A stretch of DNA of 64,000 bases from Phallusia mammillata (lineage: Eukaryota). The notes under the pieces were generated by a model. It searched no databases, was not told the origin of the DNA, and saw only the letters and a list, made by a program, of their open reading frames with translations. Made by a program: the position numbers and the translations under genes. The DNA is taken from contig OZ281494.1 of the NCBI GenBank assembly GCA_965637545.1, positions 19,158,001-19,222,000 of the forward strand, written 5' to 3'. Positions 1 to 31,800 of this stretch are shown in pieces (the first letter of the stretch is position 1; each line of letters begins with the position of its first letter).

Positions 1-3000
1 TTACAGCGGCAATCTCAAAGGCCATCGAACCTGTGTTGTCAATAACGAATGCAACGTAGGTATCCCCTGCAAAAATAATAAACGGATTATTTATATGCGG
101 CACCCAAAGTAACTTCAAAATACTAACAAGTTAAAAACGTTAAAAAAAATCAATTAAAAACAGTGAAAAGCCTTGTTTAGTTGTGATTTGATTTCGATAA
201 GTGTGACTCAAGGCGAAAGTATATTGATTCTGCACTAAAAAAACCTTGATTCTACGCACATGGCTTGATTCAATAAGCTTTTAATGAACCAAATAAATCT
301 ATCAGACCCGCTGGACGGCACTCTGGAACTGGTTGTGTCCAGGTTCTATCGGGTTGACAAGTCAAAATGGACATTCCAACCAACTCAAATCCCGTAACAC
401 AAGAATACGTCACTGTGTCTGTAACCAGATACGGAACAGCAACTGGTTGATATAAACCGTTGTCTATTTCAGCAGGATTTCCACATTCTACAAAACCAAG
501 AAAGTGCTTTTGGCAAAATTCAGAAAATCGTATGAAAGTTATCTAATAGCCCTAACCGTGCGCATTTTACACAAGTTGGACTTTAAATATTCGCGAATGC
601 TTATTGCGCCACCCGCAATACATTAGATTGTTGGTTTGTTTACAAACCAATTATGCAAATTCTATGCTATGTGATAGTGAACGAACTATCTATTGCACAA
701 TGCTACGGTTGACGCAATGCTACGACACATTTTAATCAATGACAAAGCAATTCTTATGATAAACAGTTCCTAAAAAACAAATATGTAAATGTACTTACCA
801 ATTGGCACACACACAGGCGGGTCCATAGGACTCCACACTCCATTTAAACAAGTTATTACGGAAAGTCCTTCTATTTCATAATGGCTATCGCACAAATACG
901 TCACAACTATTCCAACAACATATGGACCGTCTTTTGGCGAGAAGTCCCCGTTTTCAATGCTCTCCGGTTCCGAACATACTGAATAAAAATTTTTGGTTCA
1001 ACCCTCCACAACCAGACATGACAGATTCTAAATTTAGGGTTTGCAAGGGCGGATAAATCTTTGGCACAATGTTTTGTTTTTTAAAGTTGAATCAGTTGAT
1101 GCGATGCTGAAAACACCTTATTATTCCAGAAGAAGTGACAACAGGTTGCGACTTACCAACAGGTTCACATATTTGATCGTTTGCTGGGTCCCACGTTAAA
1201 TCATCTTGACACGTGATCATCATGGATCCACGAAGTACAAAACCCGCATCACAGATGTAAGTAAACGTATCATTCGGCAAAAAGAGGCCGTTTGGGACAG
1301 GTATAATGTTTCCGTTGGCAATAATACGCGGATGTGGGCAAACTATAACAGCACACACGAAATTAGTCTTATAAGTAGGCTATCTCACCAATCTTTTTTA
1401 TAGACGTTAAAAGTTTCACACAAGCATAAAACTATTTTGACCAAAAACTCACCTCCATTTTCGGGGCAGCAAAATCTTACTTTATAGTCACAACATTCTC
1501 CGTCATTTTCTGCATTATAACAAGCAAAGCCGTCACTAAGATCCACGTGTTGTTCTGCTGTCATATAAGAATCGCCATTCAACAAACGCGCGTCTGTTTT
1601 GGTTGGATGACTGCAAACTTCATTGGGAAAAGTTGTGACAAGAAGGGAAAGCAGTTCTAAATCACCTTCGCCTTGTGGGTCGTCAATATCAAAAAAACGT
1701 GTCCAATCGCCTTCAGGACATATGTTGCAATCTGCGAGTATAAAATGCACAATATATTCCAATGTGCTGCTCTCTACAAACACAACCTCATTCATAATCA
1801 CGAACCCCAAAGAACAGAAAAATTATCTGTGTTGTGTTTTTAACAAAGTGATGTTGTTTAGCAGCTCCAAAAGCTTCTCCGACTTTTGAGACAAAAATAT
1901 TACGAAAAAATACATAGGATTAAAATCAACAAATCACATTGTTTCCAACGTATACCTGACGGGCAACAGAAACGGACAGAATAATCTTCGCACAATTGAC
2001 CGATGTTTTCACAGTAGAAACCAATGTTTCGATTAACGACCACGTTTTGTCCTGCAGAAAGGTGACTTTCTCCCGTCAAACGGACCCGGGCATCCACCGC
2101 AATGACGTCATCACATATTTCGTCCGGATAATGAAAGCGAAGTGCGTCGAGAGTTTCAAAGTCACCTTTGATAGTTGGATCGTCAACATCATAGAAAGCA
2201 GTCCATTTTCCATTGGGACACTCTGGAGGTGGAAAAACGTCTGCAAACGACAAAATTATCTTAACTGAAAACAATATGAAAAGAAAAAACTATTTAAATA
2301 ACAGCAAAGACAATATTGTTGTCCTTAATATCGTCTATATTTTCATATTTTAAACCCGATTGAGTTGCTACATTGTGTAGTTAAAACAGGCTATTTTTTC
2401 AGACATTTATAACTTAAAAGTAAGAAATTTGGCTACTTTATTATTGTGAACTTGGTCTATTCATACCTTTAGGGCAGCAGAATCGAATTTCGTAGTCCTC
2501 GCAATTCTGTTCGATGTTGAAGCATCTCAAGCCGTATTCGGGGCTGATTTCTACTTTTTGCATTCGGGTCAAATAAGATTCGTGTGTCGTTACAACCCTT
2601 GCGTCAACAGCTGTAGGGTTATCGCATATCATTTCTGGGTATTCATCCCGCAAAGCGTTAATATTTTCTACATCTCCTTTTCCACTTGGATCGTCTATGT
2701 CTAAGAACGGCGTCCAACCACGTTTTTCACATACTGGCTCTGCAGACCAATATAGTTTCGTTAAATATATTGGGACAGCGGTTTTTACTTGAGAGAGCGA
2801 ACACATGTGGCATAGTGTAGGCAGTTTCTATCGACATAGCAATGCTTTTTTACCATACCACCACTTTTCACGATTTCTTATTAATATAGGCCAGTGGTTA
2901 CCAAACTTTTTCAGATGTTTTTCAAAACGGTCTCTTTGCCAATATTTCGAGGGCTCGCGGTCCTTAAGCCTAAATGTGTATTTCATAAAAACGAAAGTTG

Positions 3001-5421
3001 ATTGCAGGATTTTAGCCAGTTATGCAAAATTGCGCATAACAATCATTCAAAAACAGCATGTGACATCACAAACAGGACAAAAACATTACGATTGTGCGCG
3101 AACAATTGCATTTTTGATAGTTGTCATTCAATAAAGGCCATTGTTTAGCAATGGAGACAGTCGATTCTCAATTCTACTTAGATTTTAAACTTATTTAGTG
3201 GCACAAACTGACGCCAAATAAGATTATAGAATTACTTCAACCGCTTCGCGGTCCCCCCAAAATTGCCTCACGGACCCCTAAGGGACCGCGGACCCCAGTT
3301 TGGGAATCGCTGATATAGGCTCTACTGGCTTTTGGGCTATACCTGTTCGTATTTCTGTTGTATCCTTATTGCATAGGACAGGCAGAAATTGTTTCGAAAG
3401 AACTGACGAAAATTTGAAAACTGACGAAATATCACCCACACATCGTAGTAAAACTGATCAAAGGTAATTTATTGTTCTTTACTTCTGAGACTTACATGTC
3501 AGGGATAACTGTAACTTCATCGTAAAATAATAGCCTATTGTTACTTTTTAAGCATGTACTTACCGGGTGGTTGTGGGCAACAAAATCGCACTTTGTAGTC
3601 GAGACAGTTGTTATCGTTTTCTCGATTGTTACAACGAAACCCTTCTCGTGTGTTTGCTGTTACGATTTGCCCTCCAGTGGTGTAAAAAAGCCCTGTGTCG
3701 GCCACACGAGCATCGATTGCCAGTGGTTCTTTGCAGATTTTATCAGGGTACTTCAACCGCAGTAGAGGCAAGGTTTCACAATCGCATTTTCCAAACGGAG
3801 TGTCATGGTTGTAGAATGGAGTCCACATACCATCAGGGCAATATACTGCAACGGAGGAATTGTTGATCAATATTACATAGCCCACGAACAATTTCACCGG
3901 AATAATATCAAAGTTAGGCATATTGTTAAAAACAAAGCGTTTTTGTCATCGGTTCTTAAATATGTCTAGGACCGAAGGTGTCAAATTAAAAATGCTCGCA
4001 GTATGTGCTTGCTTAGTAGGAGAGCATTCATGTGCTATTCAGTGTGGTTAAATATTGGCATTATCCAATCGAACCAGCGTCTTTTAACATGAACCTCTGT
4101 TTAAAATGATAACAGAATCGTACAGTCGGCGTGTGAAGTACATGCAATTGAACTACGAAACATGTATAAAAAAGTAAACTGCTGGTTACACGTAAATATA
4201 GGCATCGCCATAGTGTTATAGTGGCCGCGTCTTACACATGTCTAAACGCAGTGGCGGTTAGATGGATGTTGACTCGGGCTGCAACCGGGGCTGTATATTG
4301 TATGTACTGCTATGACTACTACGTAGGCCTACTACTGTGCGGAACGTGCTAATTATTAAGTTTACGCTCCTCTTGATTACTTTGCTTATTTGCAGTTCTT
4401 TGGTCATAAGTCAATGTTGCAACCAAACAATGGCTAATTTTAGCTTTTCCAATATTCTGTTGCAACCAAGCTGGATGACAATGTAGTCAAGTAACACGTT
4501 ACAAAAAAGTTAAATAAAGTCACCGGATACTTAGGCTAAAATTTTCCAAAGTAAGTCCCACGAAGCATTGTACATTTTTTAATGTGTTTCATTTCGTAAA
4601 TTTATAGAAATGTAAGCACGTTTGATTTACCAGTTACTTTAAAATAAACACACTTATACGTAGGTTTGCGGAAACAAAAACTATAAGCTTTACATCAAGT
4701 AAGCTATTTGGGGATACCTCGATTAAAGGCGAAAAATTGTACAACTTTAAAATGCGCATGGCCTGCTCATAACCACCCTACACTTGAACGTACGATAGCC
4801 TAATAAATTGCACTTACCTTCAGGACAGCAAAACCGAACTTCATAATCAAGGCATTCACCGCTGCCTTGTTGGTCGTTAACACATAAGAAACCTTCTTCG
4901 ATATTAGCTTTCACAGTTTGTGCAAAAAGCTCAAAAGGAACCAACGAGCCAACTACTTTGACATCAATCTGTACAGGTTTTTCACACAAGTCTTCTGAAT
5001 GTAGACGTCTAATCTTTGCAATTGTTTCGAAATCTCCTTTTTTTGTTGGTTTGTCGACATTAAAAAATCGTGTCCAAATCCCATGGTTGCAACGTTCTGC
5101 AAAAAAATAAATAACTTACTTTTTGAAATCGTGTTTGGGGGTAGCGCTTCTATGGTTGTACTCAACCTGCGGCCGCGAACATAAAGTTATTACGGCCGTA
5201 CATATGAGAGATGGAGGATCAGGTATTGACTAGTTTTTTTTTAATTCTGACACATGGTTAAAAGGCAGATTGTGCCTTCCTGTCTAGGGGAAGTAAATCA
5301 GACAGGTTGTTTGTGTTCATAAAAGTGAGATTATACAGTTTTTGGAAATTTTAAAAAGGTACCCACCTGCGACGGAGGACCCGATCAGCAGTAGCAAAAC
5401 GTAATTGACACAAAACATCAT
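1..5421 (-). CDS. Secreted multidomain protein, 5' part: signal peptide + 5 WxxW (Mucin2_WxxW/CILP-type) + 3 Sushi/CCP + start of a vWA domain (hemicentin/VWA7-type); continues beyond the window start
   Basis: Exons on minus, all phase-1 junctions with GT/AG: 5421-5367 (MMFCVNYVLLLLIGSSVA, signal peptide); 5096-4818, 3845-3564, 2739-2467, 2240-1956 and 1731-1453 (each C..WT.F.(D/N).D.P...GD.E...C....D.R...C.N....C.DY.VRFCCP); 1342-1157, 978-799 and 487-308 (Sushi, C..P....NG....TY.C..G..L.G....TC....W.....C); 66-1 (GDTYVAFVIDNTGSMAFEIAAV, vWA beta-A with a DxTxS MIDAS-like motif). Confidence 0.9.
2892..3312. mobile_element. hAT-type MITE in an intron
   Basis: TIRs CAGTGGTTACCAAACT / AGTTTGGGAATCGCTG; perfect 8-bp TSD ATATAGGC at 2884-2891 and 3313-3320. 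Confidence 0.85.
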
Positions 5422-12049: not shown

Positions 12050-12561
12050 CGATATTGGATTGTCTCATGCCTTCTCTTATTTTAAAAATATGAATTTTTG
12101 TAGATTGTTTTTATTATCTTGACAATGTGCGGGTTGTTGCCTGCAGGACTCCAACAAATAAACAAGAAACATAAATGCAAAAGTATGTACAGATTAGTTT
12201 AAAAGTGTAGTTGTTCTGTTTTGGTCATTGCATTTAGGCTACATTATAAACCTATTTTAAAACATTATGATATTTCCTATGCTTATTTTGTATTGGGTCC
12301 CATATTAGCCATTGTCTTTTTTAAGCCTTGGTTGTTTCTGCAGGCAAAAACTCATGGGTCCCCACACATGCAAAGTTGAAAATAATGCTTTTCAAGAGAT
12401 AACCATGTTTTTGCAGTTGTCACCGTGTTGGACGGACGTGTTTTTTGGAGCTGCTGTTGTTGCTTTAAATTTCTGTTTTAACTGGCTACTTCGATGAGTT
12501 TATAGCTGTTATAACAAGTCAGATCTCCTGTAGCGGTCATATCAATATATCTTTCTCAAAA

Positions 12562-13294
12562 ATGGAAAATATTACTATCAGGGGCAGCCATAGAATGTCT
12601 AATACTAAAGCAAGTGAAGTAGGTGAGCCAACATTACGAGACGTTTTCAACCTCATGCAGTCAATGGACAAGCGCTTGACCTCAATTGAAAACGACCTGA
12701 GGGAACGCGTCGGTGAGGCAGAAACAAGCCTCGAGGTTGCACACCATCGAATTGACGAGCTCGAGGGCAAAGTAGCTTCGCTTGAAACACCTGAAGGAAA
12801 CTAAGACTGAATTGAATCAAAAGCGCGTTATGGACGAAATGCGTTCAAAAGAATTTAACCTGCTGTTTCATGGCATACCCCAACTGCTATCTCTCGAGTC
12901 ACCTGATCAAACTGAACATGTCTTAAGAACGTTCATAACGGAAAAACTGCAGTATTCTTCCTCTGAACTTGATAAAATACAGTTTAGCAATATTCACCGC
13001 CTGTCGCGGCGTACGTCAGCAATCAGTGGAAACAAAGATTTGTCTAAACCAGCCCCAATAGTTATCAAGTTTGTCAAGATGTCGGACAAAAGAAAATTGT
13101 TTTCTCTTTCTGGTCGCGCTCGGTCCTTCGATGCAAACATAACAAGGCATCTACCTGCTTCTATGCAGGCTCAAAGAAAGGAATTAATTCGACATGCAAA
13201 CAAATTCTACAATCAGGGAAAAACTATCAAATGGAAAATTATTGAAGCAGATTACTGTCTGTTCGTTAATGGTGAGAAGTTTACCGATTTTTAG
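12562..13294 (+). pseudogene. LINE ORF1 (coiled coil + RRM-type), frameshifted near 12795
   Basis: Two overlapping ORFs, 12562-12804 (coiled coil) and 12782-13294 (SKEFNLLFHGIP...IHRL...PIVIKF, typical of L1/L2-type ORF1). Confidence 0.8.
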
Positions 13295-13311
13295 TCTTTT
13301 ATGTTGTTTAA

Positions 13312-16300
13312 ATGGATCGATATGGTGATGGTTTAGCGCTTTTTCATATCAATGCTCGGAGCATTTTCGCTCATAACAGTTCTTCTAAACTAGATGAACT
13401 GCATTTTATAGCATTAAATCGTGGTTTCGACATTGTCTGCGTGACTGAAACATGGCTAGATTCAAGTGTTTCTAATGAACGCCTCATCATTGACGGTTTT
13501 CAGTTTCCTTTTAGAAAGGACAGAAATAGGCACGGTGGCGGGGTGTTGGCGTATGTACGCGATGATATTCACTGCGTACGCTTGTATGCTCACGAGTCTG
13601 ACGATTGCGAGTTGATGTGGCTGAAAATTACCATGGTTCCCGATTGTCGACCAATAATAATTTGCGTTGGATACCAACCTCCCAGTTATAACAAAGCCTC
13701 TAAAGATCTTTTTTCCGCAAAACTATGTTCTACAATTGATTTGTTACAGCAGACATCCAAATGCGTTATTATAGTAGGCGATTTTAATGAGCCCCACGCA
13801 ACTATCTTCAATTCTGCATTGTATTCTTCTGTCACTCAACGCGGTTTTACGCAACTAATAGACCAACCAACCAGATTTAGTAACATTCTAGACTGGATTT
13901 TAGTAAACACACCCGAGTGCGTATTGTCATCTGGGGTACTACCACCACTTGCAAATTTGGATCACTGTGCCATTTATGTTATACTTAACGTATCTCGTGG
14001 CGCTCTCCCCAAACACGTGTTTTACAAATGGATTTTCGCCAATAGTGATTTTGAATCTCTAAAACAAACAATATTTTAAACAATATTTTAATCGCGTATC
14101 CATGGGATGATTTGGTTGCAAGCTCATCCTCTGTGGACGTGGCCCTAAACAACATTACTGATGTTGTTAACCAGACGTGCAAAACATATATTCCACTCCG
14201 ATCTTATAAGCTAACAGCGAAATGTAAGCCATGGATGAATCACGAAATTAAACACCTGTTTCGAAAGCGACATCGCTGGTTTACCAGATGGAGAAATTCT
14301 GGTGAATTGCATCACAAATTACAATACAACAAACTTAGAAACGAAATTCAACGCAAAATTAAGACCGCAAAAGCTAAATACCATGCGCATATTGTTAACG
14401 AAGCCTGCCTTTCTCAACCTTCTTCTAAGAGGTTTTGGTCACTCACACGTAAAATCCTGAATACCAACGAAGTTTCCTATAACAGCAAAAGTACGCCAAG
14501 CTTTGTTTTCAACGGAGTAACTTATGTCAATGACATCGAGAAAGCAAATCTCCTAAATGAACATTTCGCCTCCATTTCCACACTCCCTTCAAATCTGCTT
14601 TCACTGTCTTTTCCTCCTTCTTCCTGCCAACTTAACCTATCCATACCTTCCATTGACATTACCCCGTTTGATGTGTACCACGTATTACGTAAACTTGACC
14701 CTAGCAAATCTTCTGATCCGCTAAATCTTCCTAATCACATTCTAAAACAATGTGCAGAATCCCTAGCAACGCCATTAAGCTATTTATTTGATTATATTAT
14801 ATCAGTGGGTATCTTCCCATCAGAGTGGAAAAAAGCTACAATAATCCCACTGCATAAATCCGGGCCAAAACATGATGTAAAAAATTATCGACCAATTTCG
14901 CTCCTACCCTCCCTATCAAAAGTTTTTGAAAAAATTCTCCACAAACACATGATTATTTATTTGGAATCAAATAAACTTCTGAACCCCAACAATTCCGGAT
15001 TTCGAAAAAATCATTCAACCATCACCAATCTGCTTCACACAACCCACAATATTTACGCCGATCGTGACGAAGGCATTGATTGTCGAATCGTTTTTCTTGA
15101 TATTTCCAAAGCTTTTGATCGTGTTTTGCACCACGGTTTATTTCATAAATTACAACAAATTGGGATAAATGGCAATTTGCTTCCTCTACTAAAATCGTAC
15201 TTAACTGGTCGTGTACAACAAGTTCGCCTGAACAACAACCTTTCAACCTTACTACCTACAAATGCCGGAGTCCCACAAGGTTCAATTTTAGGACCATTGC
15301 TTTTTTTGATTTATGTTAATGACATCTCCAATAACTTAACCTCTAACATTTCACTTTTTGCTGACGACACTGCCCTTTATTATTCGGATAAATCTCCAAA
15401 TCAACTTCAAAAAATTTCACAGCGAGATCTCAACCACCTCGACAAATGGGCTTCCACTTGGGCAATTAACTTTAATCCCTCCAAATCTAAAGTACTATCG
15501 CTCTGTAAAAGTTCCAATCTTCCTCAAATATTTTTCAAAGGTGTAGCTCTGCCTGAAACCCGTGCACATAGCCTACATATCTCGGCCTCATATTTACACC
15601 AACACTTTCTTGGCATGACCACATTCGTTACATTTGCCACAAAGCACAAATCAAAGTTAACCGATTGCGCAAAATATCTAACACAGTCTCTCGGCATATC
15701 ATCCTTACCCTTTATAGGTCTTGCGTTCTTCCTACGCTTGAATATGGCGACATTTTATTCGATAACTGTAACCTCTGACTGTGAAGCACTAGAAAATGTG
15801 CAACACCAATCGGCTAAACTAATTTTAGGGTGTATGAGGACCACTTCGTATGATAAAATATTACAGGACCTTGGATTGACACCCCTCCGTGTTCGTCGCA
15901 ACGTTCACTCTCTCGTTCAATTTCACAAAGTTCTAAATCGCATAGGACCTTCATATTTACAAAGCTGCATTCCTGAATACGTTAAAAACTTAATTAAATA
16001 TGACTTGCGTAACCCCCTCAAAATACATCCCATTGCGTGCCGCATAAATACCAAATATAACTCATTTTTTCCCAAAACTATCCGCTTATGGAATGAACTT
16101 CCAAAAGAAATCCGATTGATAAAATCTGTTTCAGTTTTTAAAAATAAAGTTAAAAAACTTTTCTTTACGTATCCAGTCAGAACCTTACATCTGCATGGCT
16201 CTTGTCCTAAGACAACTGCCCTTCATTGCATGCTTCGACTTAACCATAGCCCACTCAATATCAATCCCAGGCACTTTCGCCCTTGTGCATGTCAGGCCGT

Positions 16301-16544
16301 AGAAACCACGCAACATTTGTTTCTCAATTGTCCACTATTGATTCGTCCTCGCACAATTTTGTTTTCTACTGTTTCGAATATTCTGACAGAAAACGCTAAG
16401 TTTAACGCTTCATTTCTTTCCAATCTTTCTCCTGGTGCAATTATTCGTTTCATGCTATTTGGTCATCCTGATTTAACAGACGCCCACACACTGTTATTAT
16501 TCCATGCCGTTAACAAATATCTGCATGCGTGTAATAGATTTTGA
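13312..16544 (+). pseudogene. LINE ORF2 (APE endonuclease - reverse transcriptase - CCHC), disrupted
   Basis: APE motifs HINARS, VTETWL, DRNRHGGGV, GDFN, LDW, LDH. Break at a 12-bp duplication (14066-14089). RT motifs NYRPISLL, FLDISKAFD, GVPQGSILGPLLF, FADD. Segment 15576-15775 is out of frame. Terminal CACQAVETTQHLFLNCP. Confidence 0.9.
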
Positions 16545-16975
16545 TTTCTGCTGCCGATTTATTGACATTTTAACCTCTTTCGTTCGCTTTTCCTCTTTTG
16601 TTTACTATTATTATCGACTACCCTTTATCTGAAAATACGTTTATTTCTCGTATGGTGACACGACAAAGGACAGTTTTCAGTTTTCGGACTGTCGTAAAAT
16701 AAAAAAATAAAAAAAAGATAACCATGAGAAAGTGTTGTAGGGTAAAATACAGTGATCTGCAATAGGCTTAAACAATAATACTATGCTCTTCAACCGGTGT
16801 GCATGGTGCACCCTAGGGTGCACCAAAATATGCAGGGGTGCACAAGTACGAAAAGGTATACAAGGGTCGATCACAAACTTCTAATGAACACTTAATATTT
16901 GACCTTCAGGTTATTAGAAAAAAGATGTAGGTTTCAACTGATATATAAATGAACCTCTGTATTCTTTAAAAATGA

Positions 16976-19344: not shown

Positions 19345-19680
19345 CCAATTACATGATGATATTGATAACACGTGACACGTAACCTAGCAACGCTCTTTAA
19401 TGCTACAGATAAGAGCGGGAGTTTGACGACTAGTTCGGTACCTAAATTAGAATTACCTTACTTAAACAAGGTAGTTGAACTCACGTGAATTTGGTGGCCT
19501 AGGGTTTTAGGATTTAACTTTTTTCTACATGGTGGTCTACCACTCTAAAATGGCAAGATATGCTTGATTGCGTATTCACTGCAAGCCAACAGACCAATCA
19601 TACGCCAACTTTTATATCACGTGACAAATTTTTTTGTAACTTAGCAACTGCCTTTCATGCTACAGATAAGAGCGGGAGTT
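19345..19680 (+). promoter_or_regulatory. Tandemly duplicated promoter module: CCAAT - CACGTG - RFX X-box - GATA/E2F-like
   Basis: Copy 1: CCAAT 19345, CACGTG 19369, GTAACCTAGCAAC 19379-19391, ATGCTACAGATAAGAGCGGGAGTT 19400-19423. Copy 2: CCAAT 19594, CACGTG 19618, GTAACTTAGCAAC 19636-19648, identical 24-mer 19657-19680. Copy 2 ends about 70 bp before the ATG at 19749. Confidence 0.65.
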
Positions 19681-19748
19681 CGGCGGCAAGTTTGAGGTAT
19701 TTTTGTGATAGTGCAATTGTAGTGAAGACTATTTTCTAAATCACAAAG

Positions 19749-22700
19749 ATGTCAGAGGAGAAGGTAAGTTTTTTTTCTGGCAAGTTTTCCTTCCAAAATG
19801 TGTATTAACGGTTTTTACTCGCCAGGATATGGATAACTTGTCCGGTGATGAGTATGTTAAAGCGGTTTTCAAAGATGCCGGGGTAAGTCTGTATTCTGTA
19901 CAATCAAGTACATTATCTTTGCTTTTGTTACATAGGCCCACTTATATTTTAGGTGTATAGGTAATATTAAAAGTATTTTGTATAAAGATTCATTATGACC
20001 CTGCGCCAGAGCATTTTACTGCGAACCGTGAAGTTGAAACTCTTAACAAGGTAACGTCAGCATAGGATTTTTATTACTAATATGTAACCCAGCTATTACT
20101 ACCTATTTGACATGTTGTAACAAAGCATGCACAAATTAATAAATGCCCTATTCAGACTATTCTGAACAAGCACATATGTGATGATGATGAGACTTTTTAT
20201 TGGAGATATTCACTTGGAGTAAGTTGTTGAATGTTAATATTATTAGTATTTATTTATTTCATAACAAGTTTTGATGGCCTTATGTATTTTATAGATTGAA
20301 GGGGATCCTTTGTACCAAGTAAGTGTTTTTTTGGCACAGTGTTGTGTTGTTTATTTTAAAGTACATATTATCAGAGAGTCATAAACCACCAACTCAAATG
20401 TAAGTGCACACAATGATGTTAGTGTGTCACAAAAAGACAAATCCCAGTGAATAATGGGTCACAATTTCTATATTACCTATCCATTACAATATTTATGAAA
20501 AAAACATTCCAAATATTTGTCTTCTAGTGAAAATTAAATCTTTCAATTTACATACACCAACAACACATTTAAAAAGTGTTTTTTCAATGTATTTTTTGAA
20601 TCTGTGCCACTAGTGTAGTATTTAGTACTATTCTGCATTGGTTTTATGTGCAGAATACAGACAATACAAGACACTATATCACATACTCTATCCCAGTGGT
20701 TCCCAACCTTTGGTGGACCGTGGCCCCCTAAAAGTCACTTTTTGGCCTCGTGGCCCCCTTTAAGTAACCCTGAAGGTCCTGTGGCCCCCTTTAAAAGTGT
20801 AAAGGCAATCTCGAGTTGAAATTTGGTACTAATTTCGACTTTAAACAGGTCGAATAGGGTAACCAAGAATCCGCAATCGTGAAAAACCTCAATATAGACA
20901 AATAGTATGTGAAATAGTCGATTGAATTAGGGAATAAACGTAAAAAAGAAAATGGCGTTTAGTGGGTGTTTCTTGTGAATTTAGACCTGTGGCCCCCCGG
21001 AACACAGCTCGTGGCCCCCCTGGGGGGCCATGGGCCCTGGTTGGGAACCACTGCTCTATCCTATTCAATTAATATCCACTTGTATCTTTAGCTGTGAATG
21101 ACCTGTACATCTTTATTGCTTTTTGTTCAGTTTTTTTATTCTATTTTTTTGTCCTCTTAACACTCTCTTATATGCTGTTGTGACTATCCTTAATCAGATA
21201 TTACTGGTCATTTTCTACCTCTGGTGAATTTATAGACAAGTTTATCAGCAGGGAAAAGTAGTGAAACGCCTTTCATTAACACGAAAACAAAAGATCTAAA
21301 AGGATGAGTCTGTGTATTATCCTTAAGTTTAATCATATTCATAGTTGTTTAAAATACCCCTTTCCTATTTGACAATTATTCCAAAGTTACCAATAGAAGA
21401 TCCAACGGAGGGAAGTTGGATTAAGTTTATTTGGTTGGAAAGAAACACATAGCGGTGAAAAAACGCATAGTAACACACCTACACTGAAATCACTATGCTG
21501 GTAATATATAGCTGATCGATGATAATATGTTATGGAGCGCAAAATAGTGGATGGCACAGTTGATGGAGGATGATTAAATGTGCTGTAACTACACCATATT
21601 ATGACACATTCTGTGACTTGAGCTCACCAGAGAGTGAGTTTCATCCACTATTAGTATAACCCGACTGCGGGGAATGTTGGTTGGACCTGTTAAGGTGGCC
21701 CTAAACACCTACCAGCCTTACTAGAATCTAACCAATCGTGTCAAAAATGAGGCTGGGGTTCAACAGGAAAACAACCTCCCACCAACATCGCATTTTTGTG
21801 ATAACATTTTTGAGGTGACAGTTTCACCCCTCTTCTTTAAACTTTGCCTTCTCTCTTTTGTAGTGGCATTTATGTAGGTGTTGTGACTCACTGCAATCAG
21901 TTATGCATGTTTTAAGATACACCAGCAGCAAAGTAGGACCTCACAAAATGCCATGCACAGCACACATAAATTTGAGATATTGTTGTTTTTAAAGGGTTGT
22001 TTCTTATGCTTCTTATTTCTGTATTTGAGAAAATTGTACTGTGGAAGTTTACATAGGATTTTAAATGTTGGTTAATCACATTCGTTTCGAACCTGTGTGC
22101 TTATCAATATAATGCAATTAACCGGACAATTGTCTTAACAATAACAGGGATATAGTTTGAGCTTAAAGATCTTGATGCAATAAAATGGTTTATTTGATTA
22201 TCCAGATTTTTCTGTATTGTGTTTTTTGCTGTATATGTGTTATTATCATATGATAAACATACATTCATAACTGGGATCAGCCCTGAAGCATCTATGCAGA
22301 CCAGCGATCATGACACACTCATAATTAAATCACGATATGACAGGCCCATTGAAGGTACCTCACTGAATCAACCTGTTTGAACAATTGCTATCAACTTGTT
22401 TACAAGTGTCATGTATATCGTTAAAGTTTTTATTCTAACATTTGTAGTTTTAGTATATGCATGGTGTGCAAAAGATTAAACAAAGCTTATTCAAGAACCT
22501 TGGTTTAGTTAGTCTTGCCTATTCAAGAACCTTAGTTTAGTTAAACAGACTGAAACTTAGTTCTTAATTGTAGGTTTATATTTTTGGTTTAATAGTTTGA
22601 ACCAAAAAAATTAAAGCAAACAGTTCAAGTTGAGTAATATGCTTTTGTTTTTCAAAATTTTCAGCCGGATGTAAAGTACAAGAAAAAGGTAGGTATTGTT

Positions 22701-25700
22701 GCAGAATATGTGCATATTTTTAGACACATGTTAAAAGTGTTGACTTTGTTTATTTAGAACCCAAAGCGTCAAAATCTGAAGGTCAGTGAGTGATTGCTTT
22801 TAAAGGGTAAAGCTGGAAAGATTTTGTATAATTTTCTGGATTTTCTTTATAGGCGAGAATGGACACAACCACCACAGTATTTTATTTTGATGCATGCATG
22901 CCAACAAGGGTAGGAGTTGGGACAGAAGTTAGATTTTTAAAACTAAACTTTGCTCACTTTTGTTACAGATCTCAATTGATAAGAGGGAAACAGAAACTCA
23001 TGAGTGCAAAACAGTAGATGGGGATTCAAGTGTAAGACATAAATTTATGTGTATTTGTAGAGATTAATTTGTTGTTTAGCCTGTTATTTCACTCTGTTTA
23101 ATTATACAGAGACTCGTAAAGGAAAAGATGCAAAAAGAGCAAGAAGTGAGTACAGACGAAACCGGTTATTCAGGATTGCAATTTGCCAAGCTTTATCCTG
23201 ATTAACCGGTTTCCAGATTGTTCAAATTCTCTAAACAATAGAACATTTCTATAAACAGTACAACATGTGTTGATAATTTATACTTACCCAGCTGAATTAA
23301 TGTTGTTAGGTAGCTCATTTAAGGCAATAGAGTTGCTTTCTCCTCTATGATAGTCAAAAATGAACAAAATCACTCTTGCATAACTAGGTCAGCACTACAC
23401 CACTGAACAGAAGGTGAAGTCACAACACAAACTGTATTGGGTGTGTGGTGCAATCGGCACCAAATGGACACGAGCTGCACATATATTTGTTTTTGAAATA
23501 ATAGCTATCATTTTTTCCCAGTCCATCCATCTTCTCCGTTTTTCTTAACAGATTTGTCTTAAGGCAGTTGTTACACACATTACATTATTTAGGCCAGTTT
23601 GTTGAAATCGATAATAGTGAGAAAACTGTTACCAAGGGAAAATAAATTAAAATGAAACAAAAACAAGCATTTTTGTTTGCCATAATCGCATTTTTGTCTG
23701 AAATATCATCCACTTCAACCAACTGTTACTCTAAGTTACCCAGTGGGAAGTCTGACAAAGGAAAGTTGCTAAATGCAGAACATGTGCAAAACAAGTTTTA
23801 TTTGACTATTCACTGCCTAAAACATGATGTCATTTCATCAAACTGTTGTGCTGGTATGGTGCAATGGATCATGTGTCTTCAAGATAGACACCTACTTCAC
23901 AACATGCACACATGCATTTGTGATACTGTCTTTAACAACGCTTTATAACTAAATATTTTAAGAAAAACAGTTGACTGTGCGACTTTCACCCACAAATCAA
24001 TAATGCAGTTGTTAAAAAATCATTTAAAATATTTCCGTTTATCAAACATTATTTTGCTTAACAAATGGTTGGCAACATTTGAAATCCCCTTTTAAGCAGC
24101 CCACACCATAAAACAGATTGCATTTAATTGATTTAAATTTTCTTTGCAAATGATAGTTTTTCTGGTTCACCTTACCATTCTCATCAACAAGTTTTTAAAC
24201 TTTTTATCTATGCTCTCTGTACTCAATTATTATAATTTTCTTTTCTTTGTGATTAAGATTGTTGAGGTAAAATTTATGGGAAAAGGCGAAAGTATGCCAG
24301 TTGAATATCTTCAAGAAATTGATGACCTTTTCAACCAATATATCACTGAACCTGAGGATGAGCAGGTGAGTAAATAATACTTAACTTTTTATTTAATTAA
24401 GCAAGTTTTGCTATGTGTAATTTAATTTAAACCGTCTGAGATGGTAAATTTATTTGTGAGATAATTAGCAACTTTGGATTTCACAAAGCTTGGTCGTTTA
24501 TAATACATATTTTATTATGTTGATTGCAGCAAAGCTTTAATTGTGAAATGAATTTGTTGATACTGTTTTTAAAAATTAGCTTTTTTGCTCTTTCCCAATT
24601 TATTTGAAACAATGATCTCTCTGCTTCCTGCCTCATTGCTGGCCCATGGAATTATTTTTAGTATTGTTTTCTACTTGAGTGTGCAAGTTTAATTTAGATC
24701 AAATCTCAGAATGTCCGTTTGATTTTAAAAAAATGCTTAGTTGTCGGCTATTTCGGGAATAGCTGCTTAAAGCGCTATTTATTATGTGGATGCTTTAGTG
24801 ACTTTTGATGGGAATGTGGTTAACAGTATCCCCAAAGTTAGATACACCATACACAGAAAAAAATAATTTTATTAATGATAAACATAACAACTAATTGACA
24901 ACCTGCACTAAAGATGACAACAGTAATTGTTGAAACATCTGCAACTGCATGAATTTTATAAACACAAGTTCTCTTGAGGTTATGTTTTTAATTAAAGTAT
25001 TCAAAATAATCATAATAAACAAACAAAACAAGTCTGTCTTCTTTTTAGCCTGAACTAGGTTTTTTTAATGAAGCTGATGATACAAAGGTAACTTGCAAGA
25101 CAATATTTGGTTGATATCTGTTTAATAAAGTAATTTATATTGATTTGCCAGTGCTTTGACATTGTGAAACAAGATGATGTTGCAAACACTACACAGTTAT
25201 TTAGGATTGATGAGGTACAGGACTTATATTTATGCATATTCTTTTTAAAGATCTGTTAAAATTTATTGCGTTTATCTGTGTCAGCACTTTTAGTGTTTTG
25301 GACAGGTATTTTTTGTCAGTGAATAGAAGTTAAAGGAAAACAGGTAGTGGTAGTCCAGTAAATGTGATGTACAGAAATTTTGGTTCAATCATGCATTTAT
25401 AATAAAGTCTTGCTAAATGTACTGTTCAAACATTTGTTTCAGCCCTTAGAAATCATTGATCTTGAAGTTTATGAGGAGGTAAATAATCAATTTTGCATGT
25501 TGCAATTTCAGTCTAAACTTTGACAATTTTAGGTTAATTCACCGCATGATGCAGCACCAATGGCTGACAATATAAAGGTACATTAAAGTTGATGTATTTA
25601 AAACCAAAATGGTTATTATTGCATTACAACGTTTGCAGGTGGAATGTCGCCTTGTTTTAGAAGCTGTGATTGACAATATCGTTGAAATTGAAAGTAAAAC

Positions 25701-27046
25701 TGAGGTATGCTAAGGTAGGGCCTTTTAACATTTTTTTTCTTATTTGTGTTGTTTGACAGGCTATAGTATCAAAGCCGACAAGTATTGAGATGAAACCTGC
25801 AGTTTCAGATATTGAAGATGATGTCAATCAAACCATCGAAAATCTTGTTGATCAGGTTGTAGCTCAGGTAGACTCAAAACTTAAAGTAAATGATTTTATA
25901 CTTGATTAAAAAAGTGTATATAGACTGTATTGATCTGTTACTGTCATTTCAATTTTTATGAGTATTAATTGTTGTCGAGGTGCATATTGGTAAACATTAT
26001 GCTGAGTCATTCAATGTCTTAAAGTAAGAAAAAAAAATTGTTTTAGGGTTAAATGATTCAAGTTTTTGTCATTTGCAAATTTAAATACTTCTTATTTTGT
26101 AGAATTACCCTCCACAGCAAAGCCACAGTTTGCTGTCTGGTTGCCCCCCAAAAAAGAAGGTGAGCAAATTTTTGTGAGAATGCTTTTCAAATGGTGAAGG
26201 ATAGGTCATTTTTTCATTCTGGGACATGTGAAATCAGACATTATTTGTTAGCTTCACTGTACTGCCCCAAGTGGGAGAACGCATGTTACAAACAATGGTA
26301 AATGCTAAAAACATATCTGTGCCAGGCCAAAAATTCTTTAGATATCTATTAACTTTTTTAGTCAGATTTCACATGGCCAATGTTGTTGTCAGATAGAAAA
26401 GTGGCTTTCCTATTCATTTCCGTTTTATATCCTTTTTACCTATTTACTATACATTTTAGCAGGCAAAAACGAAAGGGTTCCTACACGTTCAATTTTGGCC
26501 AGTTAAAAACATTACTTTTGGTCCTTAAAATTCCAGACATGTGATTAAAAATTATAAATACCTGATTGGAACAAAATTTTACAGCACAAAGTTTTGCTAT
26601 AAAAAGGTACAGTTGCACCACTAGCCCCAAAAATTAGTGATCATTTTAAACAATGTCTGAATTGGTTCAAGTTTCAATCAGCTTTGGAATGTAGCATTGT
26701 GAGGTGTCCGTTGTTGTTTTTCACCTTGTTGCCCACCACTTTACCCACTGGCCCTCTATAATGGTTCCGGAAACTCAGCAATCTTTATATCATTTGTTTC
26801 TGTATATTAGTGTACTTTTCAATTAAAAAACGCCACATTATGCCTAATTAAATAAATATCTGATTTACATTTTATGATGTATTGTCTGTGTGTGGCCTTG
26901 TAGCAAACCAAAATATACAAATCTTCTGTGTTCATTTATAGCAACCTTACTGTTTCTTTATTTTTATATCTTAGATGGGAAAAATGCAAAAGTTTAAGAA
27001 ACTTATGCTTCGTTTCTTTTGCTGTGGTGCTAAAGTGGATTGTTAA
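19749..27046 (+). CDS. Orphan ~305-311 aa protein encoded by 17 short exons, all coding introns phase 0
   Basis: Exons: 19749-19763, 19826-19882, 19988-20050, 20156-20218, 20295-20318, 22665-22688, 22758-22781, 22853-22909, 22969-23031, 23110-23145, 24258-24365, 25443-25478, 25533-25577, 25639-25704, 25760-25867 (or 25885), 26103-26159, 26975-27046 (TAA). Each has AG/GT boundaries, a length divisible by 3, and is stop-free in frame 0. Confidence 0.75.
20694..21053. mobile_element. Young hAT MITE in intron 5 of the orphan gene
   Basis: Perfect TIR CAGTGGTTCCCAACC / GGTTGGGAACCACTG; perfect TSD CTCTATCC; repeated GTGGCCCC subterminal motifs. Confidence 0.92.
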
Positions 27047-27339
27047 AGCTGTTGGTAAGGGTTTTTGGTTCCTGATAAAAATCTAATTGTTATTCAGTGC
27101 ATTATTGATTTTTCAGATGCAGCTCTTTTTGTGATTCATCTTTCTTCACCTTTTTTATTCGCATACTCATGACCGCAAGTTAGGATACAGGTTGTGATTG
27201 AACTGTAGTTTTATGTCGGGGTAAAAGCTTATCTGGAACATACATATTGATTATGTTACAAAAAAGTAAATCTCAGAAAAAGAAACTGTACACCACATGT
27301 CCCTAACATGTTTACTTTGTCAAAAAACCTTCTCACCAA

Positions 27340-28800
27340 AATAGCATGTCCAAATCAGCTACCAGTTAATCTATTGGCAGCTTAGCAATCAAGTCCATAA
27401 AGGATGCTTACCAGCCAAGCAAAATACTCATTTATCCAACCAATTAGCAATGCCCAATCTGCAATTCCCTGCACACTTGGAAAGTTAGTGCACCACACAA
27501 GTTAACATTGCCCAACCAACCATACACGAATGCCCAACCAGTAAGTATAACCCCACCCAACTAGGTCAACAATGGTTGGCCCTCCCCACCATACAGAAAT
27601 GCCCAACCAGCATTGTACAACAATGCTTAACCTATCCAACTGATTAAAGTGCCCAACCCAACCATCCAACTGAATTCCTCAAATGGGTTAGCAATGCCCA
27701 ACCCCCCTGTCAAATAAAAATGCCACACCCACCTGATCAGTTAGAAATGTTGAACCCACCCATCCAGGTTAGCAATACTTGACCCACCCAACCAATCAAA
27801 AATGCTCAACACAACTGAACAATTAGAAAAGCCCAACCCACTCGGTCACTTAGAAATAGCTAATCCACCCAACCAGGTTAGCAATGCCCAACCCATCCGC
27901 CTAAACAGAAATGACCAAACCAGGTTGGCAATGTCACCTAAATTTGAAAATGCTCAACTGACCTCACCAATTAGAAATGGTTTATCCACCCAACCAGGTT
28001 AGCAATCCCAACCCACCCGTCCAATCAAAAATTACTAACTATTCCAAACAGGTTCGACATGACCTACTTGACGAACCAGGTTAGCCATAGACAACCCACC
28101 AAACCAGGTTAGCAATGTCCAACCCATTGGCCAATTAGAACGGCTAATCCACCCAATCAGGATAACAACCCCCTCCCAACCCCACTAATTACAAATGCCC
28201 AACCAACCTGATCAATCAGAAATCCCCAACCCATGCAATCAATAGGAAACGACCAACCCACCCAACCTGGTCAGCACTGCCCAACCAACCTGACCAATCA
28301 GAAATGACCAACCCACCCAACCAGGTTTACAATGCCCAACACACCTGGTCAATTAGAAACGACCAACCCACTGAACCTGGTTAGCACTGCCCAACCAACC
28401 TGACCAATCAGAAATCCCCAACCCATGCAATCAATAGGAAACGCCCAACCCACCCAACCTGGTCAGCACTGCCCAACCAACCTGACCAATCAGAAACGAC
28501 CAACCCACCCAACCAGGTTTACAATGCCCAACACACCTGGTCAATTAGAAACGACCAACCCACTGAACCTGGTTAGCACTGCCCAACCAACCTGACCAAT
28601 CAGAAATGACTGACCCAGACAACCAGGTTTACAATGCCCAACACACCTGGTCAATTAGAAATGACCAACCCACTGAACCTGGTTAGCACTTCCCAACCAA
28701 CCTGACCAATCAGAAATCCCCAACCCATGCAATCAATAGGAAACGACCTACCCACCCAACCTGGTCAGCACTGCCCACTTAATCAGCAAGGCCCAAACCT
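27340..28800. repeat. 27/28-bp C/A-rich minisatellite, degenerate at left and with higher-order repeats at right
   Basis: Units such as CACTGCCCAACCAACCTGACCAATCAG and AAACGACCAACCCACCCAACCTGGTCAG; the AAATCCCCAACCCATGCAATCAATAGG variant recurs at 28220, 28412 and 28714. Confidence 0.9.
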
Positions 28801-31800
28801 AATCAGCATTAAAGCCCAACTTTTTACTTTATTTGAAGTGCTTAACCCCAGAAAACTCACAACTCCTAACATGATTTAAAATGTCCCCCATTTTTTGGCA
28901 ATGTTCATCATCATTGCCAGATTCACCTACCTAATCAACAAACCATGCAATGGGCTGTACCGTTTTTGACAACCTGATTGGGTATTTTTTTAACCCTATT
29001 GAAATTTTAGTGACAGTACCCAACCCAATAACCGTCCAGCTTTTTAAAACTGAGAAGCTTTGTCCAGCAATCCCACTCAGTGAGTAGAGCCGTGGAGGAT
29101 TGTTTGATTTTGGCAAGATTTTGTTTTCTGTTGATCTAATGGTTGCTCTGCAAATAGTTCATATTTTCGTTAGTGATATCATGTAAACTCACTGCTTTTT
29201 CTACAGACCACCTGGTAAGGGGGGTACAGTTGGTCAGAAGTAGTGGCTGGTGTACTTACATTTACTGTGTTGCCTTGTCCACATGGAGGCTATCCCAAGG
29301 GGTATAGCCTGCCATGCAGTATAAACATGGCCATGGAAGCATAGTAAATGGCACGGGTGAGTGTGATGGTTTTAGGGAATTGGGCTAGTGATTACTCATT
29401 GGTTACCAAACAGATTTTTTGGTCAGGTCTGGAGGTTGGATGAATTGTTCAAATTGGTTTTGGTTTTGAAGGGTGGAAGGTAGCCTATTGCCAAAGTGCT
29501 GTTTGCATTTTTGACTCAATTAACTTATCAGTTACTTACTAGTTGCCCAAACCTGACCATTTACATCACTCATTTTCTGAAAAACTTATGTTAAAATGTA
29601 TTAACTTCAAACTTGGTACCTTACTGATTTTATATACATATGTATTTTTAGCGGCAACATATCTTTAATATCATCAAGTTAGGCTATGCATAGATTTCCT
29701 TATGTTAGTAAAATAAAGTTTTAAAATTATTATCTGGTTAAGGTTGTTATAATTTTTTGTACGTAGTAGCTGTAGTACTAAAACATAAATGTTAGGCATA
29801 TTTTTCTTGCATTTTGACTAATTTTTAATAGGACACTACCTTACAAGTGGTTTAGATACAAGTATAAATTATAGAAATAAATATTTTTCAGTGATTTTAT
29901 TTTCACAGATATTAAATCTAATATACTTTTTCGGTTTTGAACACAATTAGTTTTATCCTAATAGTGTTTTGTTCTTAATAATGTTAAAGAATAGGATAAG
30001 ACTCATCGATTAACTTATATAAACTGTATGTAGAGGTTATACTGTTTGTGTACATTCATTTAAAGTTGGCAACTGTACAGCCTTTTTATCATTTAAAAGG
30101 ATTGCATTTGGAAACAACAAAATAAAGTTCTTTTGGCTGCCTAATTTATTTCTCAAAACAATTACTAAATTTTACTGTTGGTAACATTAAATGAATGTAC
30201 ATTGGTTAACTTACGGGTGCGAGGGGAAATATTTAAAAATGTAAAACTTCAGTAAGGTGTCATAATTTCAAGTTAAAACATGTTTAACATGTGTTTTTTG
30301 ACATTGTGTGAGTAGATAGTTAGGTTTGGGACTTGTGAGCTAGCTGCTAAGCACATTGAGGCAAAAATACAGGCACTTTCGCAATAGAATATCTACCATT
30401 GTTTAAAACTTAAACCAATTAGAACAATTTTTTCCATCCAACAGTACCTGGGTAAAAAATCTTGCCAGACGAAAAAAATCTGGCTTGTTTGGTGGCTAGT
30501 GAGTTAGTCACTAGGTCAATTTTCTAAAACCAGAAGTCACATTCATCCTACAACAAGTGCATTAGCCTTTCTGGCCTACATGGACTCCCCGTCAAACAGG
30601 TGGCTGTGGGAAAAGCTTTGAGTCTGCATGGTATTACCAATGAAAATGTGAACTATGTTACAGGGGATCGGTGTGGGTGCAGCGTAGGATGGGAAGTTGA
30701 AGGGCAGAGTAACTGTTTGGTTAACAGCAAAATGATTTCTTGCTAAAAATTAAACAAATCTCCACTCCTTTACTCACTGAGTGGGACTGCTGAACACAGG
30801 TTATTAGCTTTGGAAAGCTGAACGTCAGTACACAAGGCCAGGCCTGGAGGGAAACACAGTCTACAGGGCGATGTTGAGGTTGGTGGGTTGGTTATAACTT
30901 GGTGTAGGCAACTAGAGTGCAAAGTAGCCTTGTGGGGAGTGGGATCGTATTGACCTTGGTTTGGGTACATCATTTCGAAAGATTTAAAGCACTTTAGGTT
31001 TGTTTGTTGGTGCCATTTGCCACTAAGCAGAGCATACAAAAATACTAAAATAGGTCTGATGATAACAGTAACAAAACAATTTAGCAAGAAGTAGTACTGT
31101 ATCAACTAAATTTGACTCTCAGAAAACTCAACAAATGGTACTAAGCAAAAAGGACTGAAATAAGGTTAATATTTCTTCAAGGGGCATGTGGTGTTGTTTG
31201 TAAAAAAATGGTCTGGTTTCAACCTACAAAATTTATTTAATTTCAATTACATCACCTGTTTTGTATCTTGCGGTCATGAGGTCATTTTGTGTCTAATAAA
31301 ACAACTACAAAATAATTCCAATCATGTTTTAGCTAAAAATGCGTTGTTGTGGTGACACAAAGCAGCTTAACAAACAAGTACTGCGCTGGGTGTTGTCTGC
31401 GGGATTTGTAGGTTGTAGTCCCAAGTCAAGGCCTACTTTTTTGAGATCTTGGTTACGCCTTTGCAGTGTTAGTCATGGCTGCTGGTTACCTATTTGTGGT
31501 AAAGCTTGCACAACACGTTAATCACTGCCTCATCTGAAATCATGTTGTTAATTTCTTTAAATTCATTAGAAAGCGGTACGTAGACAAATAATGTCAGGTG
31601 CTGCGTTTAAAGGCCGCTGTGTAGTACAACTACAACGTATAAAAATGGAAAAGAAGTAGTGTCCATAAATTCAGTCATCCAAAAAAAGGACAGTGCATTT
31701 CTAACAACTGTTAAACTATCCGTAGTTTGAACAGGTGATATACTTCAAACATTGTTTTGTCGTAATTGTCGTGTGTACTGACTTCAAAGTTTGTAACGTT

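What the first reader, a model, noticed from the sequence alone, without database searches (positions are those of the whole stretch)
19749..27046. Hidden orphan gene built from 17 short symmetric exons, every coding intron phase 0
Seen: following AG/GT signals gives MSEEK|DMDNLSGDEYVKAVFKDAG|IHYDPAPEHFTANREVETLNK|TILNKHICDDDETFYWRYSLG|IEGDPLYQ|PDVKYKKK|NPKRQNLK|ARMDTTTTVFYFDACMPTR|ISIDKRETETHECKTVDGDSS|RLVKEKMQKEQE|IVEVKFMGKGESMPVEYLQEIDDLFNQYITEPEDEQ|PLEIIDLEVYEE|VNSPHDAAPMADNIK|VECRLVLEAVIDNIVEIESKTE|AIVSKPTSIEMKPAVSDIEDDVNQTIENLVDQVVAQ(VDSKLK)|NYPPQQSHSLLSGCPPKKK|MGKMQKFKKLMLRFFCCGAKVDC*. All 15 internal exons (24-108 nt, three of 24 nt) are multiples of 3 and open in frame 0. Even the alternative donors (22876, 25885) and one candidate extra exon (23593-23616) keep phase 0. 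The neighbouring BRSK, semaphorin and NSRP1 genes have mixed phases. Established: schistosome micro-exon genes use symmetric tiny exons to generate variants by skipping. Inference: a lineage-specific gene in which any exon can be skipped in frame, giving a combinatorial isoform system. I recognise no domain or homolog. Caveat: exons were picked by eye, so some selection bias is possible.
Basis: partly seen in the sequence, partly recalled or inferred. Interest (0 to 1): 0.88.

Follow-up and report, generated by a model that had tools for sequence, protein, structure and literature searches.

The report
Sea-squirt gene with only phase-0 introns
A probably real, single-copy sea-squirt gene with no detectable relatives is split so that every exon holds whole codons, which is far beyond chance, but no RNA data could show that its exons are mixed and matched.

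Summary
The 17 AG/GT-bounded, in-frame segments are in the sequence exactly as listed. They are not a picking artefact.
- Choosing exons by splice-site score alone gives 17 open phase-0 exons here, against 0-3 in controls.
- Codon usage is coding-like in 16 of 17 exons, z = 6.7.
- A gene finder blind to frame recovers 12-13 of the 15 internal exons, all phase 0.

The window is Phallusia mammillata or a close relative. I read the locus as a real single-copy gene. It encodes a roughly 305-340-aa acidic, non-secreted protein with predicted helices and a basic, cysteine-bearing tail. An RFX X-box-like promoter lies upstream. Two further phase-0 exons were missed (25049-25087, 25152-25214).

Not shown: any transcript. 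Four probable RNA runs cover no exon and show no junction. No homologue, domain or paralogue was found, but only single exons could be searched.

The comparison with schistosome micro-exon genes fails on three defining features. "Combinatorial isoforms" remains a possibility that the structure allows, not a finding. The scan noted a similar phase-0 orphan gene elsewhere in this genome (s1-375401).

The parts
19368..19435 (+). Upstream promoter cassette A, holding the only full RFX X-box match in the window (at 19379)
   Evidence: one full X-box match in 64 kb (0.72 expected), 370 nt upstream of the ATG; this cassette is duplicated at 19636-19692.
19618..19692 (+). Promoter cassette B, a duplicate with a one-mismatch X-box at 19636, about 113 nt upstream of the ATG
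   Evidence: No other ATG lies between it and 19749.
19749..19763 (+). Exon 1 coding part (ATG plus 4 codons)
   Evidence: Its donor ranks 2 of 484.
19826..19882 (+). Exon 2, 57 nt, phase 0-0
   Evidence: recovered by the frame-free gene finder. Codon score +5.7.
19988..20050 (+). Exon 3, 63 nt, phase 0-0; its acceptor is uncertain
   Evidence: Weak acceptor (rank 283). The rival 19936-19960 plus 20010-20050 has better splice sites but worse codons.
20156..20218 (+). Exon 4, 63 nt, phase 0-0; moderate support
   Evidence: Codon score positive. Dropped by the gene finder because of its site scores.
20295..20318 (+). Exon 5, 24 nt
   Evidence: (donor rank 7).
22665..22688 (+). Exon 6, 24 nt
   Evidence: (donor rank 5).
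22758..22781 (+). Exon 7, 24 nt
   Evidence: (donor rank 8).
22853..22909 (+). Exon 8, 57 nt
   Evidence: (acceptor rank 4). The alternative donor after 22876 is weak (rank 218).
22969..23031 (+). Exon 9, 63 nt
   Evidence: (acceptor rank 6).
23110..23145 (+). Exon 10, 36 nt
24258..24365 (+). Exon 11, 108 nt, with a predicted helix at residues 15-29
   Evidence: Strongest donor of the region. Codon score +7.8. AF2 helix, pLDDT about 75-79.
25049..25087 (+).
   Evidence: Donor rank 10, acceptor rank 20. Codon score +5.2 to +6.4. Chosen by the frame-free gene finder at every penalty.
25152..25214 (+). Possible further phase-0 exon, 63 nt, with weaker support
   Evidence: (chosen only at the lowest penalty). 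It would leave a typical 64-nt intron after 25087.
25443..25478 (+). Exon 12, 36 nt
25533..25577 (+). Exon 13, 45 nt
   Evidence: Codon score +5.2 to +6.0. Weak generic site scores.
25639..25704 (+). Exon 14, 66 nt, amphipathic stretch
   Evidence: Matches a loose AKAP-type pattern.
25760..25885 (+). Exon 15, 108 nt to donor 25868, or 126 nt to donor 25886; long predicted helix
   Evidence: AF2 helix at residues 14-41 with pLDDT 93-95 in its core; it runs through the short-form donor.
26103..26159 (+). Exon 16, 57 nt; all three frames are open
   Evidence: Donor rank 3. This is the only exon with a slightly negative codon score.
26975..27046 (+). Exon 17 coding part with the stop codon; basic tail bearing cysteines
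27643..27718 (+). Candidate poly(A) signals (ATTAAA at 27643, AATAAA at 27713), implying a 3' UTR of about 600-670 nt
   Evidence: Inferred, not shown.

Best explanation
This is a real, single-copy protein-coding gene on the + strand of a Phallusia genome, with 17-19 coding exons. All, or all but one, of its coding introns lie between codons. The product is roughly 305-340 aa. It is acidic (net charge about -21), rich in Glu, Lys and Asp, and has no signal peptide or membrane span. It carries at least two predicted helices (exons 11 and 15) plus an unmodelled amphipathic stretch in exon 14, and ends in a basic stretch with three cysteines. I infer that this tail could tether the protein to a membrane by S-acylation. 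The duplicated X-box-like promoter suggests RFX control, hence expression in ciliated cells or sperm. That would also explain silence in the small RNA runs at hand, whose tissue or stage is not on record. I read the uniform phase mainly as a record of how the gene grew. In a gene whose introns are phase 0, only whole-codon (0,0) exons can be added or dropped without breaking the frame, and a flexible charged protein tolerates such changes. The structure permits in-frame skipping of any internal exon, and some alternative use is likely, but a dedicated combinatorial system is not shown. Shown: the sequence signals and their statistics. Inferred: expression, protein properties, membrane tether, ciliary context, mode of origin.
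For: Exons and frames are verified. Strong donors are enriched on the + strand only: 11 of at least 8 bits against 4 on the - strand. Site-only selection gives 17 open phase-0 exons against 0-3 in controls. The phase-0 chain scores 119.5 against 5-56. Codon usage trained on other genes of the window gives +59.6 bits over 305 codons, with 16 of 17 exons positive and none of 5000 control sets as high. The frame-free gene finder recovers 12-13 of 15 internal exons, all 0-0. Ten of 16 introns are 54-105 nt. Proto-splice sites inside the exons are only 37-60% phase 0, so site availability does not explain 16 of 16. At the human intron frequency of 46.3% phase 0 (PMC3632108), 16 of 16 has a probability of about 4e-6. 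The exons are unique in the genome, with repeats only in introns. There is no hydrophobic N-terminus. Helices are predicted. The X-box lies at 19379. No gene signal appears on the - strand.
Against: No transcript evidence: no RNA run holds the locus. In four probable RNA runs no exon is covered and no junction is seen, only two unspliced intronic pieces and a repeat. No protein in 1.84 billion representatives matches exon 15, so no public annotation or transcript ORF backs the model. The splice-site matrices are generic, from my own knowledge, and not trained on this species. Exons 3, 4 and 13 have weak site scores. Exon 16 is open in all frames with no coding signal. A strong GT lies 8 nt after the stop. 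The functional reading rests on motifs only, and the one binding test gave no verdict.
Confidence: 0.62

Rival explanations
1. One reading: a MEG-like system in which the symmetric exons are skipped in many combinations to give a family of protein variants from one gene.
For: Every internal exon is a whole number of codons. Two further optional-looking phase-0 exons exist. An in-frame alternative donor at 25885 lengthens a predicted helix. Proto-splice availability does not explain the uniform phase. In humans, alternative exons are enriched for symmetry and disorder (PMC3632108).
Against: No isoform has been seen. Micro-exons of 36 nt or less make up only 17% of the coding sequence. There is no signal peptide, no gene family and no similarity between exons. 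Most splice sites are strong, which is more typical of constitutive exons.
Confidence: 0.1
2. A real gene whose model is wrong in places, so the true transcript has mixed phases. For example, exon 3 may really be 19936-19960 plus 20010-20050 (one phase-1 intron), or the C-terminus may be read in another frame through the donor at 27055.
For: The frame-free gene finder prefers the split version of exon 3 on splice-site score. Exon 16 is open in all three frames. Frame 2 of exon 17 is open up to a strong donor.
Against: At least 12 exons are 0-0 under any scoring.
Confidence: 0.2
3. There is no functional coding gene here. On this view the chain is chance plus selection by eye, or a non-coding or decaying transcript unit.
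For: No RNA and no homologue were found. Phase-0 exons can be chained freely, so picking by eye is an easy route to a false chain.
Against: Controls chosen the same way give 0-3 such exons, not 17. The codon signal has z = 6.7 against open pseudo-exons. The signal is strand-specific. The short-intron length pattern looks genuine.
Confidence: 0.07

Closest known systems
Genes of disordered proteins assembled from runs of symmetric (0,0) exons (Schad, Kalmar and Tompa 2013, PMC3632108)
   Same: A run of successive 0-0 exons encodes a charged, probably flexible protein. The symmetry makes exon gain, loss or skipping frame-neutral.
   Different: That paper reports frequent internal tandem duplication. 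Here no exon resembles another. Disorder was judged only from composition and two short folds, not predicted for the whole protein.
[quoted passage not shown] 2010, as described in PMC4350168)
   Same: Symmetric exons that are multiples of three, no relatives outside the lineage, and a structure that would allow variants by skipping.
   Different: MEGs have most of their coding region in very small exons, all carry a signal peptide, and they form about 25 families. Here micro-exons are 17% of the coding sequence, there is no signal peptide, and the gene is single-copy. Skipping has not been observed.
A-kinase anchoring proteins and other partners of RIIa or DPY-30 domains, such as ciliary or flagellar scaffolds
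   Same: An acidic protein with amphipathic helices. Exons 14 and 15 fit a loose anchoring-helix pattern. A helix is confidently predicted. The promoter motif is ciliary in type.
   Different: There was no Pfam or PDB match. The pattern is expected about 0.6 times by chance in a protein of this size (my estimate). The docking test gave no verdict. This is a lead only.
The other phase-0 genes noted in this genome by the scan (s1-375401 orphan micro-exon array; s1-399111 TSR repeat gene)
   Same: Same genome, with runs of phase-0 symmetric exons. One of them is also an orphan, non-secreted and probably disordered.
   Different: Those are repeat-encoding arrays (P/Q-rich repeats; TSR domains). 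This gene has no internal repeats. I did not re-examine them.

Membership tests
Schistosome micro-exon genes (MEG) | Most of the coding region lies in very small exons | tested here: not met
   Exons of 36 nt or less total 159 of 915 coding nt, or 17%. Definition from PMC4350168.
Schistosome micro-exon genes (MEG) | Internal exons are symmetric (whole codons) | tested here: met
   All 15 internal exons are multiples of 3 and open in frame 0. Twelve to thirteen are recovered without frame knowledge.
Schistosome micro-exon genes (MEG) | The product has a signal peptide and is secreted or surface-anchored | tested here: not met
   In the N-terminal exons the longest apolar run is 3 residues or fewer and the mean hydropathy is negative. 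No dedicated signal-peptide predictor was available.
Schistosome micro-exon genes (MEG) | Member of a multi-copy family | tested here: not met
   Exons 11 and 15 match only themselves in the 240-Mb genome. DNA searches find only intronic repeats.
Schistosome micro-exon genes (MEG) | Variant proteins are made by exon skipping | not testable with these tools
   No run on record as RNA holds the locus, and the contigs laid show no junction.
Disordered-protein genes built of symmetric exons (PMC3632108) | Successive exons of the same symmetric phase class | tested here: met
Disordered-protein genes built of symmetric exons (PMC3632108) | A mostly disordered product (over 70% predicted disorder) | tested here: inconclusive
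   The protein is 32% charged, with net charge -21 and low hydropathy. Two exon peptides fold as helices. No disorder predictor was run and the joined protein was not analysed.
Disordered-protein genes built of symmetric exons (PMC3632108) | Origin by internal tandem exon duplication (frequent, not obligatory) | tested here: not met
   The best exon-exon alignment has z = 2.6 and none stands out from shuffles.
AKAP-type anchoring proteins | An amphipathic helix fitting the RII-binding pattern | tested here: inconclusive
   The pattern hits exons 14 and 15 and a helix is predicted, but the pattern is loose. Pfam and PDB searches found nothing.
AKAP-type anchoring proteins | Binding to an RIIa-domain dimer | tested here: inconclusive
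   Four RIIa loci exist in the genome. The complex prediction gave no verdict.
RFX (X-box) regulated ciliary genes | An X-box within a few hundred bases upstream of the start codon | tested here: met
   The only full match in 64 kb lies at 19379, and a one-mismatch copy lies at 19636. Binding and expression are not testable here.

The most novel reading that the evidence does not exclude
A chordate, intracellular counterpart of micro-exon genes. In this reading, one single-copy gene has 15-17 whole-codon cassettes (including the optional exons 25049-25087 and 25152-25214 and the in-frame donor choice at 25867/25885). These cassettes would be combined differently in different ciliated cell types or in sperm, changing the number and spacing of docking helices on a membrane-tethered scaffold.
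Probability: 0.08. Interest if true: 0.65.

Novelty: new member of a known kind. Interest (0 to 1): 0.3.

Why it matters
If the model holds, this is a clean chordate example of a lineage-restricted gene whose 16-18 introns all share one phase without any repeat structure. Neither chance (about 4e-6 at usual phase frequencies) nor proto-splice-site availability explains that. It would be a useful test case for two questions. One is how young, flexible proteins grow by adding frame-neutral exons. The other is whether such a structure is actually used for alternative splicing. In practice it also flags a probable gene, with two extra exons, that has no match among 1.84 billion public protein representatives. 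As it stands it is a well-supported gene prediction with an unusual but known type of architecture, not a new mechanism.

Tried and rejected
RNA support: the look-up of sequencing runs found no RNA holder. Laying four probable RNA runs on 21400-27399 gave no exon coverage and no joints. Exons 1-5 were outside the 6-kb limit, and both caps are now used.

Homology: Pfam on eight exons found nothing at E up to 10. HMMER of exon 15 against 1.84 billion representatives found only a spurious low-complexity repeat protein. PDB sequence searches of exons 11, 14 and 15 found nothing meaningful.

Binding: complex prediction with an SPA17-like RIIa dimer from this genome and exon 15 gave no verdict (score 0.29 against a mark of 0.34). 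That counts neither for nor against binding.

Other checks:
- Rfam on 19-29 kb found nothing.
- Exon duplication is rejected.
- A gene on the - strand is rejected.
- A hydrophobic alternative C-terminus through the donor at 27055 is disfavoured by codon score.
Full report
**What is in the sequence.** I recomputed all 17 segments from the window. Each has the stated coordinates. Each follows an AG (exon 1 starts at its ATG) and precedes a GT. The alternative donors after 22876 and 25885 and the 24-nt candidate 23593-23616 also exist and are in frame.

**Is it more than chance or picking by eye?** Phase-0 exons can be chained in any order, so the danger is real.

- **Donor strength.** Donors of at least 8 bits number 11 on the + strand and 4 on the - strand.
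- **Site-only exon choice.** I took every AG..GT pair of 21-130 nt that passes a splice-site threshold, without regard to frame. The region gives 48 pairs, of which 27 are multiples of three and 17 are open in phase 0. Nine control stretches on either strand, mostly of the same size, give 12-18 pairs, 3-8 multiples of three and 0-3 open.
- **Best uniform-phase chain.** The best chain of uniformly phase-0 exons scores 119.5 here. Every other 7.2-kb window on either strand, in any uniform phase, scores 5-56. The one exception is the Mucin2_WxxW repeat gene at 1-5 kb on the - strand, which is uniformly phase 1 and scores 131.6. That gene serves as a positive control for the method.
- **Codon usage.** The other two frames give -153 and -315. 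None of 5000 equal-sized sets of open, AG/GT-bounded pseudo-exons from control sequence reaches this value (z = 6.7).

A small gene finder that allows any intron phase and uses sites plus codon score recovers 12-13 of the 15 internal exons exactly, all of them 0-0, and adds 25049-25087 at every penalty. Ten of the 16 introns are 54-105 nt long.

**Where the model is unsure.**
- Exon 3 has a poor acceptor. The gene finder prefers 19936-19960 plus 20010-20050, which would make one phase-1 intron.
- Exons 4 and 13 have modest site scores but positive codon scores.
- Exon 16 is open in all three frames and has no coding signal.
- A strong GT lies 8 nt after the stop, and a second frame of exon 17 is open up to it. 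That frame scores -2.0 against +3.9.
- The optional exon 23593-23616 lies in a dispersed repeat and scores negatively.

**Transcripts.** No run on record as RNA holds the locus. I laid four probable RNA runs of the same species on 21400-27399, which covers exons 6-17 within the 6-kb limit. No exon was covered and no joint was seen. The only matches were a short repeat at about 22252-22312 and two unspliced, low-depth pieces inside introns. This neither supports nor refutes the model. The runs are small, and their tissue or stage is not on record.

**Relatives.** The neighbouring NDUFS8 exon is 98% identical to a UniRef protein of Phallusia mammillata, so the window is that species or a very close relative.
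- Pfam finds nothing in eight exons.
- Exon 15 (42 aa) finds only a spurious repeat protein among 1.84 billion representatives.
- PDB and the ESM Atlas give nothing usable.
- In the 240-Mb genome, exons 11 and 15 match only themselves. DNA searches find only intronic repeats: a roughly 360-bp element at 20690-21060, and repeats at 23149-23791, 24893-25002 and 26609-26758. They also find the promoter duplicate.

So the gene is single-copy and has no detectable relative at exon level. A diverged orthologue in other ascidians is not excluded.

**The product.** Summed over exons, it has Glu 33, Lys 30 and Asp 27 of 305 residues, with net charge -21. No exon has an apolar run longer than six residues, and the N-terminal exons are strongly polar, so there is no signal peptide or membrane span. 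AlphaFold on single exons predicts a helix at residues 15-29 of exon 11 (pLDDT about 75-79). It predicts a long helix at residues 14-41 of the long form of exon 15 (pLDDT 93-95 in the core). That helix runs straight through the short-form donor. Exons 14 and 15 fit a loose anchoring-helix pattern, but this pattern is expected by chance about once in two proteins of this size (my estimate). The last exon is basic and carries three cysteines, which I infer could be S-acylated. Upstream lies the only full X-box match in the 64-kb window, at 19379. Its duplicated cassette carries a one-mismatch copy at 19636. Both lie within 370 nt of the first ATG, in line with the scan's note s1-549933.

**Why all phase 0?** At the human intron frequencies (46.3% phase 0; PMC3632108), 16 of 16 has a probability of about 4e-6. 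The protein is rich in Lys, Glu and Gln, whose codons end in AG. I therefore counted proto-splice motifs inside the exons. Only 37-60% are in phase 0, which gives 1e-7 to 3e-4 for 16 of 16, so site availability alone does not explain it. Exon duplication does not explain it either, because no two exons are alike.

The remaining ordinary explanation is a founder effect. Once a gene's introns are phase 0, only 0-0 exons can be inserted, lost or skipped without breaking the frame, and a flexible charged protein tolerates that. Schad et al. describe this link between symmetric exons, disorder and alternative splicing in human genes. Selection for skippability is the more exciting alternative and cannot be excluded.

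**Comparison with micro-exon genes.** As described in PMC4350168, MEGs have most of their coding region in very small symmetric exons. All of them encode a signal peptide, and they form about 25 families restricted to flatworms. Here only the symmetry is met. Micro-exons are 17% of the coding sequence, there is no signal peptide, and the gene is single-copy. It may work like a MEG in allowing in-frame skipping, but it is not a member, and the skipping is unobserved.

**Verdict.** The combinatorial-isoform reading is untested. The architecture belongs to a known kind. The scan has already noted a comparable orphan phase-0 array elsewhere in this genome (s1-375401), which suggests a genome-wide count would be more informative than this single case.

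Noticed in passing
window 1-5000, - strand: A gene made of at least five Mucin2_WxxW repeat exons. The chain search scores it as uniformly phase 1 (131.6 bits, 14 exons), so a second uniform-phase gene lies in the same window, here of the classic 1-1 domain-exon type.
   Followed up: partly
window 20690-21060: A roughly 360-bp element with terminal inverted repeats sits in intron 5. At least 40 copies at 87-98% identity are spread over the chromosomes, which looks like a young MITE family.
   Followed up: partly
window 27400-28810: A C/A-rich satellite-like array (periods 55, 110 and 192 nt) starts about 350 nt after the stop codon. It overlaps the likely 3' UTR and both candidate poly(A) signals.
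   Followed up: no
window 22252-22312: A short element in intron 5 is matched by many contigs of all four probable RNA runs, at depth up to about 260. These contigs continue into unrelated sequence, so it is an expressed dispersed repeat. Rfam finds nothing there.
   Followed up: partly
window 19368-19435 and 19618-19692: Besides the X-box, the duplicated promoter cassette carries a CACGTGAC box and an AGATAAG (GATA-like) site in both copies. A possible non-coding first exon with a donor near 19470 follows copy A.
   Followed up: no
window 12500-16550, + strand: A non-LTR retrotransposon with long open frames (an 810-aa ORF with a reverse transcriptase domain) lies about 3 kb upstream of the gene.
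   Followed up: no
G000 loci L011, L012, L013, L014: Four RIIa-domain loci exist in this genome. By eye they look like an SPA17-like gene, a PKA RII-like gene with the domain split by an intron, and two others.
   Followed up: partly
window 23143-23415 and 21865-22018: Two low-depth contigs from probable RNA runs match intronic sequence perfectly and unspliced, while no exon is covered. One starts 3 nt before the exon 10 donor, and the other starts 1 nt after a strong AG. I have no explanation; they may be DNA carry-over.
   Followed up: no
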